Shown here one piece after another: positions 2,786-14,427 of a stretch of 64,000 nucleotides of DNA. The position numbers and the translations under genes were made by a program. The notes below the pieces were generated by a model. The model saw only the letters and a list, made by a program, of their open reading frames with translations, made no database searches and was not told where the DNA came from. Each line of letters starts with the position of its first letter. Position 1 is the stretch's first letter. The stretch lies in IMG/VR virus record IMGVR_UViG_3300030339_000003, positions 124,001 through 188,000 of that record; one strand, given 5' to 3'.

Positions 2786-4732
2786 TTAGATGCTGAAGAA
2801 ATCGTAGTTACCGCCGCCTTGACCATTAACGTCAGAGCCCGCTGCGAAATCAACTGCCAGCGTTGCGCCAGGTGCAAAGATTGCCTGGTTGTTCATGAAG
2901 CTACCGATCAGTGAGCTGGTGTTCAGTGTACCGATACCAGAGAACACTTTACCGATAGTTGCCATGAAGCGAGGATCCATAACACCAACACGACCGAACC
3001 CTGTGATATTGACATCAGTCAGGTTCAGGTTTTCAACCAGCATTACGCGCAGACGCTGTTGACGTGAACGTTCGTTTTCACGGCTGTCTTGATGATAGAT
3101 AGTACGCATGAAGTTCTCAGCGTGCAGGATACCATTAGGACCAGCCATGTGGCTAACTGCCATTTCGTCCAGTTCACGCAGGTTGAAGTATTCGCCGTTG
3201 AAGCAAGCGGTACCGTCAATGATGAGCTGAGGAATGGTGTGGTAAACCGGGTCAGTTGCTTTCCATACGGAATCAGCGCTTGATACATGAGCGGTGAAAG
3301 CGTTGGTGGTGATAGCATCAGCTGCAGTCAGAATGGTTTTGATTGCTGCTGCTTTACGGTCCGGTGTACCCAGGTCGACGATCAGTTTGGTCAGCGCAGA
3401 GTTGATGTTGCCTGGCAGAACCGGAACTGTGAAGATTGCTGATTGCATGATGTGGAAACGAATCCACTGGTTAACCGCATCAATGTCCAGGCTAGCTTTG
3501 CTATCCAGTTTGACGGAGTTAGTACCGACGATACGTTGAACGTTGTTGTCGCGAACGTATTTGTCCAGACGTGGTTCCAGAGAAGCCAGGCTACCACGAA
3601 CACCGCATTTAGGACGACGCAGAACGTCACCGAATGCATAACGGTTGTTAGAACACATCAGGACAAACAGACCCATCAGCCATGGAACGATACCACCATT
3701 CGAGTTCATCTGCGGACCGGCTACTGCGCAATCCAGAGAGATCGATGGACGGTAAGGTTTCCAGCCATCCGGAGTCATACCTTCGTTAAACATTGGACGA
3801 CCCTGGGTGCGACGCAGAACGTTAATGTGGTCCTGATAACCGTAAGGAATCAGAGACACGTTAGCGTAAACGCGGCAAACTTCGCGTGGCGCATTTTCAG
3901 GGTTGTTGCTGTTTTGGTTTTGACCGTTGGTGGTGATAACCTGAACTTCCATGTTGGACGGCAACAGAACACCATTGTCACCCAGCTTGGCAGTTACTGG
4001 CAGAATACGCGCATCTGCAGTTTGGTTAGGACCGTACGGAGATTTACCATGGAACACGTTCGGCAGTTGTTTGCCACGAGCACCGGCTTCAGCTGTCATC
4101 TGCGCCATGACGGAAGTTTCCCATTCACGGTCGATGTACTGAGTGATGCGTTCTACCAGTTGCTTTTCGTCGTTACGAACGTCGAAGTAGCTTTCCAGTG
4201 GAACGATGCCGTGGCCGATTTGAACGATGTTCAGATCATGACCTTGGTTCTGACGCAGGGAGTTTTCCAGCGCCAGTGTCAAATTACGACCGATGTACGC
4301 AGAAGGTGTACGAGGTACAGATACACGTTGCTGATTCGCGGCATACATCTGAACTTCTTCAAAGTCAACGATCTGATCTTTGGAGTGGAACAGGAATGGT
4401 GCGAAATAAATCGTACGACCGATTTTGGTCCAGAGCAGCAGGCCAGGCAGCACTGGTGAGATATTGGCATCGATAATATCCAGGTTCGGAACGATACCGG
4501 CTTTAGCGGTGTTGAGGCGATCTGCTTTACGACCTTCGAACAATTTCTTCAGACTTTCAGAAGCCAGGTTGATTTCACGGATATTACGGCCCGCGAAAGA
4601 ACTTGAAGTCTGAGTCATCAGCTCCATCATTTCTAACAGATCATTTGAACCACCGGCAGCAGTTTTATTTGCATTGTTGCCTTTAGCTTGTTCGTCCGCG
4701 CCCCAAGAAGTGTTATCGCTATTTACGCCCAT
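2786..4732 (-). CDS. chmA: chimallin, phage nucleus shell protein (phiKZ gp54 / 201phi2-1 gp105-like)
   Basis: ~650 aa, between the DNA polymerase block and nvRNAP beta' (invariant synteny in Chimalliviridae), highly expressed codon bias, own TATATTAC promoter, flexible N/C tails. Confidence 0.85.
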   Translation of the reverse strand: MGVNSDNTSWGADEQAKGNNANKTAAGGSNDLLEMMELMTQTSSSFAGRNIREINLASESLKKLFEGRKADRLNTAKAGIVPNLDIIDANISPVLPGLLLWTKIGRTIYFAPFLFHSKDQIVDFEEVQMYAANQQRVSVPRTPSAYIGRNLTLALENSLRQNQGHDLNIVQIGHGIVPLESYFDVRNDEKQLVERITQYIDREWETSVMAQMTAEAGARGKQLPNVFHGKSPYGPNQTADARILPVTAKLGDNGVLLPSNMEVQVITTNGQNQNSNNPENAPREVCRVYANVSLIPYGYQDHINVLRRTQGRPMFNEGMTPDGWKPYRPSISLDCAVAGPQMNSNGGIVPWLMGLFVLMCSNNRYAFGDVLRRPKCGVRGSLASLEPRLDKYVRDNNVQRIVGTNSVKLDSKASLDIDAVNQWIRFHIMQSAIFTVPVLPGNINSALTKLIVDLGTPDRKAAAIKTILTAADAITTNAFTAHVSSADSVWKATDPVYHTIPQLIIDGTACFNGEYFNLRELDEMAVSHMAGPNGILHAENFMRTIYHQDSRENERSRQQRLRVMLVENLNLTDVNITGFGRVGVMDPRFMATIGKVFSGIGTLNTSSLIGSFMNNQAIFAPGATLAVDFAAGSDVNGQGGGNYDFFSI

Positions 4733-12269: not shown

Positions 12270-12289
12270 TAAGTAATATAGGTCTGAAA
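12270..12289 (-). promoter_or_regulatory. early promoter (TATATTAC) for phuZ
   Basis: Minus strand TTTCAGACCTATATTACTTA. Confidence 0.8.
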
Positions 12290-12362: not shown

Positions 12363-13319
12363 ATCCCCAGAAGGTTCATTGTATTCGGAATCCTAGGATG
12401 GCGCAATGCCAATCAATATATTTCTTACGGCGTAGCGGCCGAGGATGCGCTGGTTTTAATACTTCCGAACTGGGGATGAGTTCATTGGAAGATTCGGTAT
12501 ATGTTAAACCTTTAATGGTAGCTACCACAAGATTAAACATCGTAAGTTGGGTTAGAAAGAATTTACCGGTTGAGGGTAAACGTAATATAAGAAACATTGT
12601 TACCCTCCATTTGGAATATCATTTAGAGTGAAGCATTGTGTACAAGTCAAGAGCATATCACATCGGAGGCTGCCCGATGTACGCTTCATTGGCTTACTGT
12701 TATAGCCCGTTAATCTTCCATAACGCGACGCGTCGCAACAAGAAGTTCTTTAACCGGCATGTGTGGCTCTTATTGGTACCGGATATACCGGCGGTGGTGT
12801 CCACGAGCTACCAACGTGTCTCGTCGGTGTGCTTACACAATACCCACTCTAAATGATACTAAAGCAGGTCAACTATCCTTGTTGACCTTTACTTTTATTA
12901 CAGGCTGTTTACGACAAGGCAAAAGAACGCTCACGCTGACAGGGATGAGGTTCGGTAAGTATTTGATTTACTTAACGAACATCACTTTACATAAAGGTTG
13001 ATATTGCAGTGAGAAATTATTAGTGTCTGCTAGGGGCATAGGGGTGAAAGTCCCGTTCCCATTTTCTATTCTTGTTGTTCCCACACAGACCGATGGGCAA
13101 GCAGTTTTCACTTCGGGAGAAGCAAACTTTTATCGTTGCAACGCGATAAATCTTTAATAAGGTGTAAGGTATTCAATAACTTTATCGAGTTTGGTTGTCA
13201 ATAGACGTTTCAATTAAAAACTGAGTTTCAGTTACTGGTACCTTACATAAAGAGTATTTGCAAAACAGATCGACGGTTAACAATGCGAGGTGACACCCTT
13301 AATGATCTGTTTCACAAAT
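12363..13319. ncRNA. putative large structured non-coding RNA or RNA cluster (unassigned)
   Basis: No convincing CDS; nested long-range helices, e.g. 12617-12630/12845-12858 (14 bp perfect), 12635-42/12834-41, 12363-70/12470-77, 13163-71/13239-47, 13263-71/13304-12. Confidence 0.6.
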
Positions 13320-13320
13320 T

Positions 13321-13430
13321 TGGTAGGAAGTGAAGGATTCGAACCTCCGCGCTGTCCAGTATAGCCGTGGCCATACCTTCAAGCGACAACACTTATTATG
13401 TTGGGGCTTCGGCCTCTCGCCCAACTTCCT
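13321..13430 (-). tRNA. atypical 110-nt tRNA-like RNA with very long variable arm (anticodon position ATA)
   Basis: Acceptor AGGAAGT/ACTTCCT-A-CCA, D arm GGC/GCC, CAACA-TAATAAG-TGTTG, 38-nt variable region, T arm GGAGG-TTCGAAT-CCTTC. Confidence 0.75.
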
Positions 13431-13434
13431 ATAA

Positions 13435-13521
13435 TAGTGACCAAGGTTGGAGTCGAACCAACGTACACACTTTGGTGTAACTCTATTTAAGAGTAAGATG
13501 AGCCGTTCTCTTTTCTTGATC
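13435..13521 (-). tRNA. degenerate tRNA-like RNA / pseudo-tRNA
   Basis: Acceptor GATCAAG/CTTGGTC, T arm GTTGG-TTCGACT-CCAAC, variable-arm hairpin TACAC/GTGTA, aberrant anticodon arm, ends A-CTA. Confidence 0.6.
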
Positions 13522-13531
13522 TGAATTAGTA

Positions 13532-13921
13532 TTATGACTCGACAAGTGAACTAATAAACAAAAGTTGTTTACCAATTAACTTCACTTCTGACCAGCCTTT
13601 TTCAATAGCAAGTTTAATAACCAAATTAATAAGTTCTGGTTTAATGGCTTCTTTGTTGCAGTCCATTAAAGGGGTTACATTTCCCAACTTATCATACACT
13701 GGCCAGTCTGGTTTATAATAAGACTTAATAAGTTTTAAAACACCATCGCTACTCATTAAATAAGTAGGATCGTTTTTAGTTCTTTCCCCAGCATCCGGCA
13801 AACTAACTATTTTTTGTTTAAAATAGTTAAATGGAGTGGGATCACCTGGACCCGCTAAATGTTCATTAACGCGTGGAGGTTCGGCTGGATAAGGCTGATT
13901 TAATATTAACTCGTCTTTCAT
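13532..13921 (-). CDS. hypothetical protein embedded in the tRNA/ncRNA island
   Basis: 129-aa ORF with GAGG RBS. Confidence 0.7.
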   Translation of the reverse strand: MKDELILNQPYPAEPPRVNEHLAGPGDPTPFNYFKQKIVSLPDAGERTKNDPTYLMSSDGVLKLIKSYYKPDWPVYDKLGNVTPLMDCNKEAIKPELINLVIKLAIEKGWSEVKLIGKQLLFISSLVES

Positions 13922-13992
13922 TTTTTACTTCCTCATGGATTGTGCATCAAAAACCAAAATGGTAGATGCGGATCTTCATGACTTTATGAAGT

Positions 13993-14077
13993 TGGTACGA
14001 GGGATGGGAATCGAACCCACATGATCGAAATCGAGGGATTTTAAATCCCTTGCGTCTACCTATTTCGCCACCCTCGC
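13993..14077 (-). tRNA. tRNA-Leu(UAA)
   Basis: Full cloverleaf GCGAGGG...AGGGA-TT TAA AA-TCCCT, type II variable arm, TTCGATT loop, A discriminator, encoded CCA. Confidence 0.96.
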
Positions 14078-14084
14078 GTTTATT

Positions 14085-14345
14085 AGACACCGGCTCGCTC
14101 TGTGATGAACTCACGTCACTTAAAATACTCCCTGCCGGAATGGGGAATCGCGTTGGTCACAGATATAGTCGCGTACTAAACCGTTCTCAACGTTCTTGTA
14201 TAAGGTGACGCCCCTACGAATCCCACGTAGCTTATAAGCGCCCATAAGTCAAAATCAACACTTCGCACAATGGCCTGGTTGGTTCCTACTCATTTAGGGC
14301 TTACGGTCGTCTTCTGGTTCCCAATGGAACACTGCGACAGGCATC
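14085..14345. ncRNA. putative structured RNA between tRNA-Leu and tRNA-Asn
   Basis: ORF-free, GC-richer than flanks, several stems (14099-105/14157-63, 14273-77/14338-42, 14317-21/14326-30). Confidence 0.4.
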
Positions 14346-14351
14346 ATAATT

Positions 14352-14427
14352 TGGCGACCCTAGCAGGACTCGAACCTGCGACATATGGATTAACAGTCCA
14401 CCGTTCTACCAACTGAACTATAAGGTC
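14352..14427 (-). tRNA. tRNA-Asn(GUU)
   Basis: 76-nt cloverleaf GACCTTA...GTGGA-CT GTT AA-TCCAT...TTCGAGT...G-CCA. Confidence 0.96.

What the first reader, a model, noticed from the sequence alone, without database searches (positions are those of the whole stretch)
13321..13430. 110-nt tRNA-like RNA with giant variable arm and non-canonical anticodon loop
Intact acceptor stem, encoded CCA, D arm and T arm, but a 38-nt variable region (CGCT/AGCG, internal loop, GTATGGC/GCTATAC), much longer than in Leu/Ser/Tyr/Sec tRNAs. The anticodon loop TAATAAG lacks the invariant U33 (anticodon position ATA). Preserved pairing suggests selection for shape rather than decoding: a candidate tRNA mimic/decoy or non-translational aminoacyl carrier (inference).
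Basis: partly seen in the sequence, partly recalled or inferred. Interest (0 to 1): 0.75.

Follow-up and report, generated by a model that had tools for sequence, protein, structure and literature searches.

The report
Phage tRNA-like gene, giant extra arm
A giant nucleus-forming phage carries a 110-base gene that folds exactly like a transfer RNA, but it has an extra arm about twice the normal length and a crippled anticodon loop; sister strains of the same phage lack it, so it is an optional tRNA look-alike, not a working decoder.

Summary
On the minus strand, 13430..13321 folds into a complete class II (long-arm) tRNA cloverleaf. It has a 7-bp acceptor stem, A73 and an encoded CCA. Every universal tertiary nucleotide is intact except U33, which is A. 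The variable region is 38 nt. ARAGORN and Rfam miss it only because of that arm: once the arm is trimmed in silico to 26 nt or less, default ARAGORN calls tRNA(ata).

It lies in a hypervariable tRNA islet (Asn, Leu, ORF129, a second tRNA-like RNA "TLS2", then this element). The islet sits upstream of the PhuZ tubulin gene of a 231-kb chimallivirus-like jumbo phage.

The element is a clean 114-nt presence/absence cassette. It is identical in four assemblies, counting the window's own genome. It is absent from five contigs of the same phage species, one of which has an identical PhuZ. No diverged homologue or parent tRNA was found in any collection, so covariation cannot be tested.

My best reading (0.4) is a non-decoding, tRNA-shaped accessory RNA that host tRNA enzymes process. 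Two other shape-intact tRNA-likes with contracted loops in this phage group support this. The main rival (0.35) is a young, neutral tRNA pseudogene. Interest is moderate.

The parts
13321..13430 (-). The 110-nt tRNA-like gene (whole element)
   Evidence: Sequence. Cloverleaf minimum-free-energy fold. ARAGORN calls tRNA(ata) after the variable arm is trimmed.
13424..13430 (-). Acceptor stem, 5' strand AGGAAGT (A1:U72 first pair)
   Evidence: Pairs with 13325-13331. Pair probabilities 0.81-1.0.
13405..13421 (-). D arm: 3-bp stem, loop with A14, G15, G18, G19 and A21, and G13.A22
   Evidence: Read from the sequence and the fold. The D-loop is of the class II (Ser/Tyr-like) type (alignment).
13387..13403 (-). 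Anticodon arm: 5-bp stem CAACA/TGTTG. The loop TAATAAG (13392-13398) has A33, A34, U35, A36 and A37. The minimum-free-energy fold closes U32.G38, leaving a 5-nt loop.
13349..13386 (-). 38-nt variable region: base stem CGCT/AGCG, a 4x4 purine-rich internal loop, and an 8-bp upper hairpin (13358-13377) with two G.U pairs
   Evidence: There is no second copy of this hairpin in the 231-kb genome and none in viral contigs.
13332..13348 (-). T arm GGAGG-TTCGAAT-CCTTC (G53:C61, T54, T55, C56, A58)
13321..13331 (-). Acceptor 3' strand ACTTCCT, discriminator A73 and encoded CCA
   Evidence: The CCA is followed directly by the conserved flank AATTTGTGAAACAG.
13321..13434 (-). The 114-nt presence/absence cassette (TTAT plus the element)
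   Evidence: Absent in L031, L032, L033 and L050, where TLS2-CTA joins AATTTG directly. Present in the window's own genome (L047), L036, L037 and L051.
13438..13521 (-). TLS2, a second class II tRNA-like gene 7 nt upstream. It has A73, no CCA, and a 5-bp stem with a 5-nt loop in place of an anticodon loop.
   Evidence: Rfam tRNA 23.5 bits, below the cut-off of 29. ARAGORN calls it only at lowered thresholds. Fold. 84/84 identical in L031-33 and L050.
13532..13921 (-). ORF129, a protein of unknown function that always lies directly 3' of a tRNA in relatives
   Evidence: No Pfam family. The AlphaFold2 model is poor, pLDDT 53.
13993..14077 (-). tRNA-Leu(UAA), a canonical tRNA
   Evidence: ARAGORN. 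Rfam 57.1 bits.
14352..14427 (-). tRNA-Asn(GUU), a canonical tRNA
   Evidence: ARAGORN. Rfam 73.8 bits.
13153..13320 (-). Conserved non-coding flank that always follows the last tRNA or tRNA-like gene of the islet
   Evidence: 92-96% identical in L030 and L031. It is joined to Leu-CCA in L030, to TLS2 in L031 and L050, and to the element here.

Best explanation
The element is a tRNA-derived accessory gene. It comes from a class II tRNA whose variable arm has been lengthened by a 20-26-nt hairpin and whose anticodon loop no longer supports decoding.

I infer that it is transcribed with the co-oriented tRNA islet. Host RNase P would cut it out at A1 and 3' trimming would stop at the encoded CCA. 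It would then fold into a normal L-shape with a roughly 16-layer rod projecting from the elbow side.

Because only the acceptor/T/D core is kept, it most likely acts by shape. It would occupy proteins that recognise the tRNA body or CCA end and do not need an anticodon. Candidates are processing and CCA enzymes, an aminoacyl-tRNA synthetase (A73 plus U35 fit bacterial TyrRS best), or a host tRNA-targeting defence factor.

It is optional equipment. It is carried by one strain lineage as a 114-nt cassette and is missing in sister strains.

Shown: the structure, the tRNA ancestry, why the finders miss it, the cassette-like distribution, and the existence of sister tRNA-likes. Inferred: expression, processing, charging, and any decoy or competitor role.
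For: - All 20 canonical stem pairs (7 acceptor, 3 D, 5 anticodon, 5 T) and all 12 variable-arm pairs are intact. Every universal tertiary nucleotide is intact too (U8, A14, G15:C48, G18, G19, A21, G53:C61, T54, T55, C56, A58). The only lesions are at U33/A34 and in arm length.
- Default ARAGORN accepts it as a tRNA once the arm is 26 nt or less.
- The arm extension stacks on the old variable stem. It contains two G.U pairs, which count as pairs only in RNA.
- It has the same strand and register as tRNA-Asn, tRNA-Leu and TLS2. U(-1) precedes A1 and the CCA is encoded.
- There is precedent in the same phage group. TLS2 has a 5-nt loop and is 84/84 identical in three genomic contexts, while the adjacent ORF129 is 89.5% identical and the non-coding background 92.8%. 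The L034 Trp-like gene keeps its cloverleaf through compensatory acceptor and T-stem changes relative to the L035 tRNA-Trp, but has a 6-nt loop and no CCA.
- A patchy, cassette-like distribution is typical of phage accessory genes.
- The identity determinants A73 and U35 of bacterial tRNA-Tyr are present (PMC9976931).
Against: - No diverged homologue exists in IMG/VR contigs, JGI metagenomes, GenBank phages or 185,579 species genomes. There is therefore no covariation, and no evidence of long-term retention.
- Five contigs of the same phage species lack it, including one with an identical PhuZ protein, so it is dispensable.
- Intact stems are also what a very young pseudogene would show.
- The 100% identity of TLS2 could reflect recent recombinational spread and not purifying selection.
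- No expression data are available. No promoter motif was found between 13431 and 17729.
- The genome encodes no tRNA ligase, CCA-adding enzyme or class Ib synthetase that would point to a tRNA conflict.
Confidence: 0.4

Rival explanations
1. It is a young tRNA pseudogene. A class II tRNA cassette was disabled by a palindromic insertion or expansion at the tip of its variable arm and by two anticodon-loop substitutions. It now rides neutrally in a hypervariable islet until it is deleted.
For: - It is present only in one strain lineage, and all copies are 100% identical.
- It is cleanly absent in L030, L031-33 and L050.
- L030 looks like a deletion between two direct TACCAA repeats that removed the whole Leu-to-element segment.
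- The clade shows ongoing birth and death of tRNA genes: tRNA-Leu split by an HNH-like ORF in L029, tRNA-Asn without its anticodon arm in L045, and a degenerate Trp-like gene in L034.
- No homologue was found anywhere.
Against: - All damage sits in the two places that abolish decoding, with none in about 64 paired nucleotides or in the D and T loops. Two random substitutions in an 84-nt parent would both hit the 7-nt loop less than 1% of the time (my estimate; it assumes a canonical parent).
- The inserted segment forms a perfect coaxial helix with RNA-only G.U pairs.
- CCA is retained, whereas the L034 copy has lost its CCA.
Confidence: 0.35
2. It is a working but unorthodox decoder: a tyrosine-accepting tRNA with anticodon AUA. 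It would read UAU, the phage's preferred Tyr codon. Its altered loop (A33, A34) and bulky arm would let it escape host nucleases that deplete tRNA-Tyr.
For: - A73 and U35, the critical bacterial tyrosine determinants, are present, and the body is class II.
- TAT makes up 62% of Tyr codons in this genome.
- ARAGORN labels the trimmed form Tyr(ata).
- Phage tRNA-Tyr is known to rescue T5-like phages from retron-Eco7 PtuAB (PMC11555353), and phage tRNAs can evade nucleases through loop changes (PMC10264068).
Against: - U33 is missing, and the loop can close to 5 nt through U32.G38.
- G34 is missing.
- From my own knowledge, A34 in a two-codon box is essentially unused in nature.
- The neighbour TLS2 would by the same logic be Phe(AAA), yet it has a 5-nt loop. 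This suggests A/U drift in unconstrained loops, not design.
- In the T5 case, changing the anticodon abolished rescue, so decoding fidelity mattered there.
Confidence: 0.12
3. It is a cis-acting processing signal. A tRNA-shaped module would recruit RNase P and 3' trimming enzymes to cut the long islet transcript, defining the 3' end of the ORF129/TLS2 RNA and the 5' end of the conserved non-coding RNA region downstream.
For: - In every variant the conserved flank AATTTG(T/C)GAAACAG follows directly after a tRNA or tRNA-like 3' end: Leu in L030, TLS2 in L031 and L050, and the element here.
- ORF129 homologues always start just after a tRNA.
- About 1.1 kb with almost no coding capacity follows. 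It includes a structured block that is conserved across the clade.
Against: - TLS2 or tRNA-Leu already supplies that punctuation in strains without the element, so the element is redundant for the purpose.
- This role does not explain the long arm or the retained CCA.
Confidence: 0.08

Closest known systems
Bacterial class II tRNAs (Tyr, Ser, Leu)
   Same: 7/5 acceptor/T architecture, a 3-bp D stem with G13.A22, a Ser/Tyr-type D loop, a variable arm that starts one nucleotide after the anticodon stem and ends at C48, and an encoded CCA. The clade's own tRNA-Ser(GCU) shares A1:U72 and about 75% of the body outside the anticodon and variable arms.
   Different: The variable region is 38 nt, against the 12-20 nt seen in the class II tRNAs aligned here. 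From my own knowledge, natural class II arms rarely exceed about 25 nt. It has A33 in place of U33. Its anticodon AUA is unknown for Tyr. It fails the bacterial Ser identity set and parts of the Leu set.
Phage tRNAs that counter tRNA-targeting defences: T5/SP15 tRNA-Tyr against retron-Eco7 PtuAB (PMC11555353), anticodon-loop variant phage tRNAs (PMC10264068), and the tRNA-Lys variant against PARIS AriB (PMC12409363)
   Same: It is encoded in a phage tRNA-rich, variable region. It is Tyr-like by A73 and U35, and its anticodon loop differs from the host norm.
   Different: Those tRNAs are canonical and must still decode; changing the anticodon of the SP15 tRNA-Tyr abolished rescue. They have normal variable arms and standard tools find them. 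No defence-related phenotype is known for this element.
Non-translating pseudo-tRNAs with cellular roles, e.g. Bacillus cereus tRNA-Other (PMC3399842)
   Same: A tRNA-shaped RNA that does not function in translation but may still have a biological effect.
   Different: tRNA-Other is chromosomal and bacterial, has ordinary size, and has a demonstrated phenotype. This element is phage-borne and strain-specific, has a giant arm, and has no phenotype data.
tRNA-Sec and allo-tRNAs (PMC5389517)
   Same: A long extra arm, and poor recognition by standard tRNA finders.
   Different: Those have 8/5, 8/4 or 9/3 acceptor/T branches and functional anticodon loops. This element is 7/5 with a defective loop, has no UCA anticodon, and lacks a 6-bp D stem.
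Stable RNAs of unknown function in the phage T4 tRNA gene cluster (species 1 and 2, rnaC/rnaD). Recalled from memory; the paper library returned nothing.
   Same: Small stable non-tRNA RNAs encoded among phage tRNA genes and matured by the tRNA-processing machinery.
   Different: No sequence relationship was tested. The T4 RNAs are conserved parts of the cluster, whereas this element is a strain-level cassette.
TLS2 (window 13438-13521) and the L034 Trp-like gene of a related phage
   Same: The same islet type, intact acceptor, D and T domains, and an anticodon hairpin contracted to a 5-6-nt loop.
   Different: Neither has an expanded variable arm, and both lack an encoded CCA. No sequence similarity to the element beyond the T loop.

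Membership tests
Canonical elongator tRNA (Rfam RF00005 / ARAGORN) | 7-bp acceptor stem, discriminator base and 3' CCA | tested here: met
   AGGAAGT/ACTTCCT, A73 and CCA. Pair probabilities 0.81-1.0.
Canonical elongator tRNA (Rfam RF00005 / ARAGORN) | Conserved core nucleotides U8, A14, R15:Y48, G18, G19, A21, G53:C61, T54, T55, C56 and A58 | tested here: met
   All are present when the sequence is numbered against the cloverleaf.
Canonical elongator tRNA (Rfam RF00005 / ARAGORN) | 7-nt anticodon loop with U33 and a purine at position 37 | tested here: not met
   The loop is U32 A33 A34 U35 A36 A37 G38. U33 is replaced by A, and the minimum-free-energy fold closes U32.G38 to leave 5 nt.
Canonical elongator tRNA (Rfam RF00005 / ARAGORN) | Variable region within the accepted range (ARAGORN accepts up to 26 nt) | tested here: not met
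   It is 38 nt. Default ARAGORN detects the element only when the region is shortened to 26 nt or less.
Canonical elongator tRNA (Rfam RF00005 / ARAGORN) | Score at or above the family threshold (29 bits) | tested here: not met
   No RF00005 match at this site even at E<=10.
Bacterial tRNA-Tyr | Discriminator A73 | tested here: met
   A at window 13324. Identity set from PMC9976931.
Bacterial tRNA-Tyr | Anticodon determinants G34 and U35 | tested here: not met
   U35 is present but position 34 is A, not G. The set is met only in part.
Bacterial tRNA-Tyr | Charging by TyrRS | not testable with these tools
   Needs an aminoacylation assay.
Bacterial tRNA-Ser | G73, C72, C11-G24 and G30-C40 (with G2-C71, R4-Y69 and a large variable region) | tested here: not met
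   The element has A73, U72, G11-C24 and C30-G40. Only G2-C71, A4-U69 and the large variable region fit.
Bacterial tRNA-Leu | A73 plus A15-U48, G18G19 and A20a | tested here: not met
   A73 and G18G19 are present, but the Levitt pair is G15:C48 and position 20a is C.
tRNA-Sec | 8/5 acceptor/T branch, 6-bp D stem and UCA anticodon | tested here: not met
   7/5 branch, 3-bp D stem and an AUA anticodon triplet. No Rfam clan hit.
Phage anti-defence tRNA (nuclease-evading or tRNA-replenishing) | Decoding-competent tRNA whose expression rescues the phage from a tRNA-targeting system | not testable with these tools
   Needs phage-host assays. The structural prerequisite, a canonical loop, is not met.
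Conserved structured non-coding RNA family | Diverged homologues with compensatory base changes | tested here: not met
   Only 100% identical copies were found (L036, L037, L051 and the window's own genome). There were no other hits in any collection.

The most novel reading that the evidence does not exclude
The element, TLS2 and the L034 Trp-like gene represent a previously undescribed class: mobile, non-decoding tRNA mimics in the tRNA islets of nucleus-forming jumbo phages. They would keep only the acceptor/T/D core, here with an added rod-like arm, and would act in trans on host tRNA-recognising proteins. Possible modes are as decoys or inhibitors of tRNA-targeting immunity, or as anticodon-independent aminoacyl carriers.
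Probability: 0.2. Interest if true: 0.75.

Novelty: new variant of a known kind. Interest (0 to 1): 0.42.

Why it matters
Phage tRNA genes are now known to be weapons in conflicts over host tRNA pools, but the known examples are ordinary decoders. A phage RNA that keeps the full tRNA body, gives up the anticodon and grows a rod-like arm would extend that picture to tRNA mimicry. The same goes for the two sister RNAs with contracted loops.

Nature has already provided strains with and without the element, so a function could be tested directly.

There is also a practical point. tRNA finders silently drop such genes because of a hard limit on variable-arm length, so similar elements may be under-counted in phage genomes.

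If the element is only a young pseudogene, it still documents how fast tRNA cassettes are gained, broken and lost in these islets.

Tried and rejected
**Homologue hunts that found nothing useful**
- blastn of the 401-nt region and of the 110-nt element against GenBank phages gave only generic T-arm/acceptor matches.
- Exact-pattern scans of IMG/VR found no homologue. The patterns were the arm hairpin, the D loop plus anticodon loop, and the D arm plus anticodon stem with a free loop.
- A scan for the 3' 23-mer found only an unrelated viral tRNA-Tyr(GTA), L002.
- A giant-arm pattern found a different tRNA-like family, L022-L028.
- The one JGI metagenome scan returned only two identical copies.
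- Two scans of 185,579 species genomes gave zero hits.
- A TLS2 pattern scan gave zero hits.
- The genome search 'relatives' is not available for virus records.

**Ideas tested and rejected**
- tRNA-Sec or allo-tRNA: rejected on branch geometry.
- An intron in the tRNA: ARAGORN with -i only forces a spurious 'Ser(act) with a 10-nt intron'. The 4x4 internal loop is not a bulge-helix-bulge motif, and the insert is far too short for a group I intron.
- A repeat or mobile hairpin: there is no second copy in the genome, and no partial matches in any of the 54 fetched loci.
- An origin from the clade's tRNA-Ser(GCU): the body is about 75% similar, but it is just as similar to an unrelated viral tRNA-Tyr, and the anticodon arm does not match. 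This stays unresolved.

**Side checks that led nowhere**
- ORF129 function: no Pfam family, a weak LPD7 feature lead, and an AlphaFold2 model too poor to search with (pLDDT 53).
- The genome encodes no phage RNA ligase 1 (that search also found nothing in the control genomes, so it is uninformative), CCA-adding enzyme or class Ib synthetase.
- Tad2-like genes flank the islet in relatives, but this genome has only weak, distant hits.
- Literature searches found no report of a comparable giant-arm phage tRNA.

Full report
**What is there**

The window is bases 124001-188000 of a 231,366-bp viral genome with direct terminal repeats. It encodes a PhuZ tubulin, a multisubunit virion RNA polymerase beta subunit and a divergent DNA polymerase. 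In a close relative the syntenic neighbour gene is a chimallin. This is therefore a nucleus-forming (chimallivirus-like) jumbo phage. Its nearest isolates, Erwinia phages RisingSun and Joad, share only 39% PhuZ identity.

The finding lies on the minus strand, read from 13430 down to 13321. It has these parts:
- A 7-bp acceptor stem (AGGAAGT/ACTTCCT, with A1:U72 as first pair), A73 and an encoded CCA.
- U8.
- A 3-bp D stem with G13.A22, and a D loop carrying A14, G15, G18, G19 and A21.
- A 5-bp anticodon stem and the loop U32 A33 A34 U35 A36 A37 G38.
- A 38-nt variable region.
- A T arm, GGAGG-TTCGAAT-CCTTC.

The variable region consists of U44, a 4-bp stem, a symmetric 4x4 internal loop (TGAA/GGAC) that can form tandem G.A pairs, an 8-bp stem with two G.U pairs capped by CACG, and C48. 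C48 can make the Levitt pair with G15.

The unconstrained minimum-free-energy fold is exactly this cloverleaf (-41.1 kcal/mol, z = -2.76, 1 of 200 shuffles folds as well). Every helix has pair probabilities of 0.63-1.0. The fold also closes U32.G38, which leaves a 5-nt loop.

**Why the standard tools miss it**

ARAGORN finds only tRNA-Leu(taa) and tRNA-Asn(gtt) in the window and in the whole genome. Rfam's tRNA model reports those two plus a sub-threshold hit at 13438-13521 (23.5 bits), and nothing at the element even at E<=10.

I removed base pairs from the top of the upper hairpin in silico, one at a time. Default ARAGORN calls a tRNA with anticodon ata as soon as the variable region is 26 nt or less, and never above that length. 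The failure of the detectors is a length limit, not poor tRNA character.

**Context**

Reading along the minus strand, the order of genes is:
1. A glutaredoxin-like gene (14848-14435).
2. tRNA-Asn (14427-14352).
3. A conserved 274-nt spacer.
4. tRNA-Leu(UAA) (14077-13993).
5. ORF129 (13921-13532).
6. A second tRNA-like gene, TLS2 (13521-13438).
7. A 7-nt spacer.
8. The element.
9. About 1.1 kb with almost no coding capacity.
10. A terminator-like hairpin, a CTATATTAC motif and PhuZ.

CTATATTAC occurs seven times in the window, always on the minus strand, against 0.6 expected. One copy lies just before PhuZ, and the motif is conserved before PhuZ in relatives. From my own knowledge it resembles phiKZ-type early promoters. 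None lies between 13431 and 17729, so the islet is probably read through from upstream. That is an inference.

**Comparative evidence**

PhuZ and ORF129 homologues let me fetch the same region from other assemblies.

| Status | Locus | Source |
|---|---|---|
| Element present, 100% identical | own genome (L047) | JGI 3300030339 |
| Element present, 100% identical | L036 | Ga0302272 |
| Element present, 100% identical | L037 | Ga0302271 |
| Element present, 100% identical | L051 | ENA ERZ27249832 |
| Element absent | L031, L032, L033 (ORF129 88% aa identity) | ENA |
| Element absent | L050 (PhuZ protein identical to the window's) | Logan SRR28490303 |
| Element absent | L030 (PhuZ 99%) | Logan ERR8576894 |

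- In L031-33 and L050, TLS2-CTA is joined directly to the flank AATTTGCGAAACAG.
- In L030, the CCA of tRNA-Leu is joined directly to AATTTGTGAAACAG, so ORF129, TLS2 and the element are all missing.
- The element is therefore a clean 114-nt indel (TTAT plus 110 nt).
- The 672 nt missing in L030 are bounded in the window by two direct TACCAA repeats, at the 3' ends of tRNA-Leu and of the element. A simple deletion from a window-like ancestor would produce L030. This hints that the element predates that split, but it is only a hint.

More distant relatives (PhuZ about 60% identical) carry tRNA-Asn plus tRNA-Ser(GCU) and no such element.

No diverged copy, and no parent lacking the insert, was found anywhere. 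I searched GenBank phages, IMG/VR, JGI metagenomes and 185,579 species genomes.

**Sister elements**

TLS2 folds as a class II cloverleaf with A73 and no CCA. In place of an anticodon loop it has a 5-bp stem and a 5-nt loop. It is 84/84 identical between the window and L031-33, and it is also present in L050. The adjacent ORF129 is 89.5% identical and the non-coding background 92.8%. TLS2 occurs in three different upstream or downstream contexts.

In L034, a Trp-like gene differs from the intact tRNA-Trp(CCA) of L035 by compensatory changes that keep, and even improve, the acceptor and T stems. However, its loop is cut to 6 nt and its CCA is gone.

Overtly broken genes also exist:
- In L029 the tRNA-Leu is split after the D loop by about 870 nt carrying an HNH-like ORF.
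- In L045 the tRNA-Asn lacks its anticodon arm.

The islets therefore combine rapid cassette turnover with a recurring type of RNA: tRNA-shaped, with a closed-up anticodon hairpin.

**What could charge it**

I compared the element with the bacterial identity sets compiled in PMC9976931.

| Identity set | Met | Not met |
|---|---|---|
| Tyr | A73, U35 (the critical determinants) | G34 (A here) |
| Ser | G2-C71, R4-Y69, large variable region | G73, C72, C11-G24, G30-C40 |
| Leu | A73, G18G19 | A15-U48 (G15:C48 here), A20a (C here) |

Tyrosylation is the best guess, but it is unproven.

TAT is 62% of Tyr codons, TTA is the commonest Leu codon, and TAA is 81% of stops. An anticodon AUA would thus match the preferred Tyr codon. 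However, A33, A34 and the closable loop argue against efficient decoding.

**Interpretation**

The damage is confined to the two features that matter for decoding, while 32 base pairs and all tertiary nucleotides are intact. The arm extension stacks coaxially and uses RNA-only G.U pairs. The phage group also has other tRNA-likes that keep their shape but have lost a normal anticodon loop.

On this basis I favour a non-decoding, tRNA-shaped accessory RNA that host tRNA enzymes process and that acts through its acceptor/T/D core (confidence 0.4).

The main rival is a young pseudogene in a birth-and-death islet (0.35). It explains the strain-limited distribution and the lack of homologues equally well, and the present data cannot exclude it.

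An unorthodox Tyr(AUA) decoder that evades nucleases (0.12) and a pure processing signal (0.08) are less likely.

They are compatible with the data, but nothing computed here supports them directly.

**Comparison with what is known**

The nearest known things are:
- Ordinary class II tRNAs.
- Phage tRNAs that replenish or evade tRNA-targeting defences (PMC11555353, PMC10264068, PMC12409363). These must still decode.
- Non-translating pseudo-tRNAs such as B. cereus tRNA-Other (PMC3399842).
- tRNA-Sec and allo-tRNAs with long arms but different branch geometry (PMC5389517).
- From memory, the stable RNAs of the T4 tRNA cluster.

The element fails membership of canonical tRNA on U33, on arm length and on the Rfam score. 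It also fails the Ser, Leu and Sec tests. I file it as a new variant of a known kind: a phage-encoded non-canonical tRNA or tRNA-like gene.

**Limits**

- All copies found are identical.
- No expression data are available.
- The host is unknown.
- Pattern scans need exact matches, so moderately diverged copies could have been missed.

Noticed in passing
window 13438-13521 (-): TLS2, a second class II tRNA-like gene 7 nt upstream of the element. It has A73, no CCA, and a 5-bp stem with a 5-nt loop in place of an anticodon loop. Rfam tRNA scores it 23.5 bits, below the cut-off. It is 84/84 identical in L031-33 and L050, although the neighbouring ORF129 is only 89.5% identical.
   Followed up: partly
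window 12930-13140 (-); L012, L038, L042, L044: A non-coding block of about 190 nt with 79% mean column identity across phages whose PhuZ is only about 60% identical. RNAalifold gives 52 pairs, 11 of them with compensatory changes. In L044 one helix flips from GGG/CCC to CCCC/GGGG around an invariant ACUUUCAC loop. There is no Rfam match. L040 and L041 carry a 92-aa ORF inserted inside the block. It is probably an undescribed structured RNA of this phage clade.
   Followed up: partly
window 14078-14351 (-): The 274-nt spacer between tRNA-Asn and tRNA-Leu is 93-97% conserved in L030 and L031 and partly recognisable in the 71%-PhuZ relative L029. It has no credible ORF and no Rfam hit, so it may be another islet-encoded RNA.
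   Followed up: no
L029 1800-2750: tRNA-Leu(TAA) is interrupted after the D loop by about 870 nt carrying a 243-aa ORF with a weak HNH_3 match (E = 3.6e-4, below the cut-off). The 3' part of the tRNA resumes after the ORF. This is either an endonuclease insertion or an unusual intron.
   Followed up: partly
L034 214-288 versus L035 3838-3914: A Trp-like gene with an intact cloverleaf and compensatory acceptor and T-stem changes, but a 6-nt loop (CACAAA) and no CCA. It sits where the relative L035 has a normal tRNA-Trp(CCA).
   Followed up: partly
L045 about 4395-4470: A tRNA-Asn homologue that lacks the whole anticodon arm; the acceptor, D and T arms are retained. ARAGORN does not call it.
   Followed up: no
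L022-L028 (IMG/VR contigs; e.g. L022 7956-8062): An unrelated family of about 105-nt tRNA-like RNAs with an acceptor stem, a D arm (GAGAGGCCGAAG loop), a T arm and an ACCA end. The roughly 50-nt middle section forms a long hairpin that covaries between members. ARAGORN does not call them.
   Followed up: partly
window 13532-13921 (-) and its leader 13922-13992: ORF129 family. In every relative examined it starts just after a tRNA (Leu, Trp, a Trp-like gene, or Ser). It has a conserved leader containing a hairpin, which some gene callers translate as MKIRTYRFGF. It has invariant IPDxGERTxNDPxYLMS and GWxEVKLIGKQL motifs. There is a weak Atlas feature lead to LPD7 (0.86) and no confident fold.
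   Followed up: partly
window 12273-12281 (-) and six other minus-strand sites: CTATATTAC occurs 7 times, always on the minus strand, against 0.6 expected. One copy lies just upstream of PhuZ and is conserved there in L029 and L031. It is probably the early promoter motif of the phage RNA polymerase.
   Followed up: partly
L035 3004-3306; L055 339-638; L056 970-1269: In more distant relatives a Tad2-like gene (Pfam PF11195; from my own knowledge an anti-Thoeris family) lies just upstream of the tRNA/ORF129 islet. The window's genome has only two weak sub-threshold matches about 30 kb away.
   Followed up: partly
L030 6930-7060 and L031 1725-1850: Strains that lack the element carry, further downstream, a 43-aa ORF followed by tRNA fragments: a T-arm-like GGTGGTTCGAATCCTCC, then a D-arm-like GTAGCTCATAGCGGTCTAGAGC. 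The order looks permuted. This segment is replaced by different sequence in the window.
   Followed up: no
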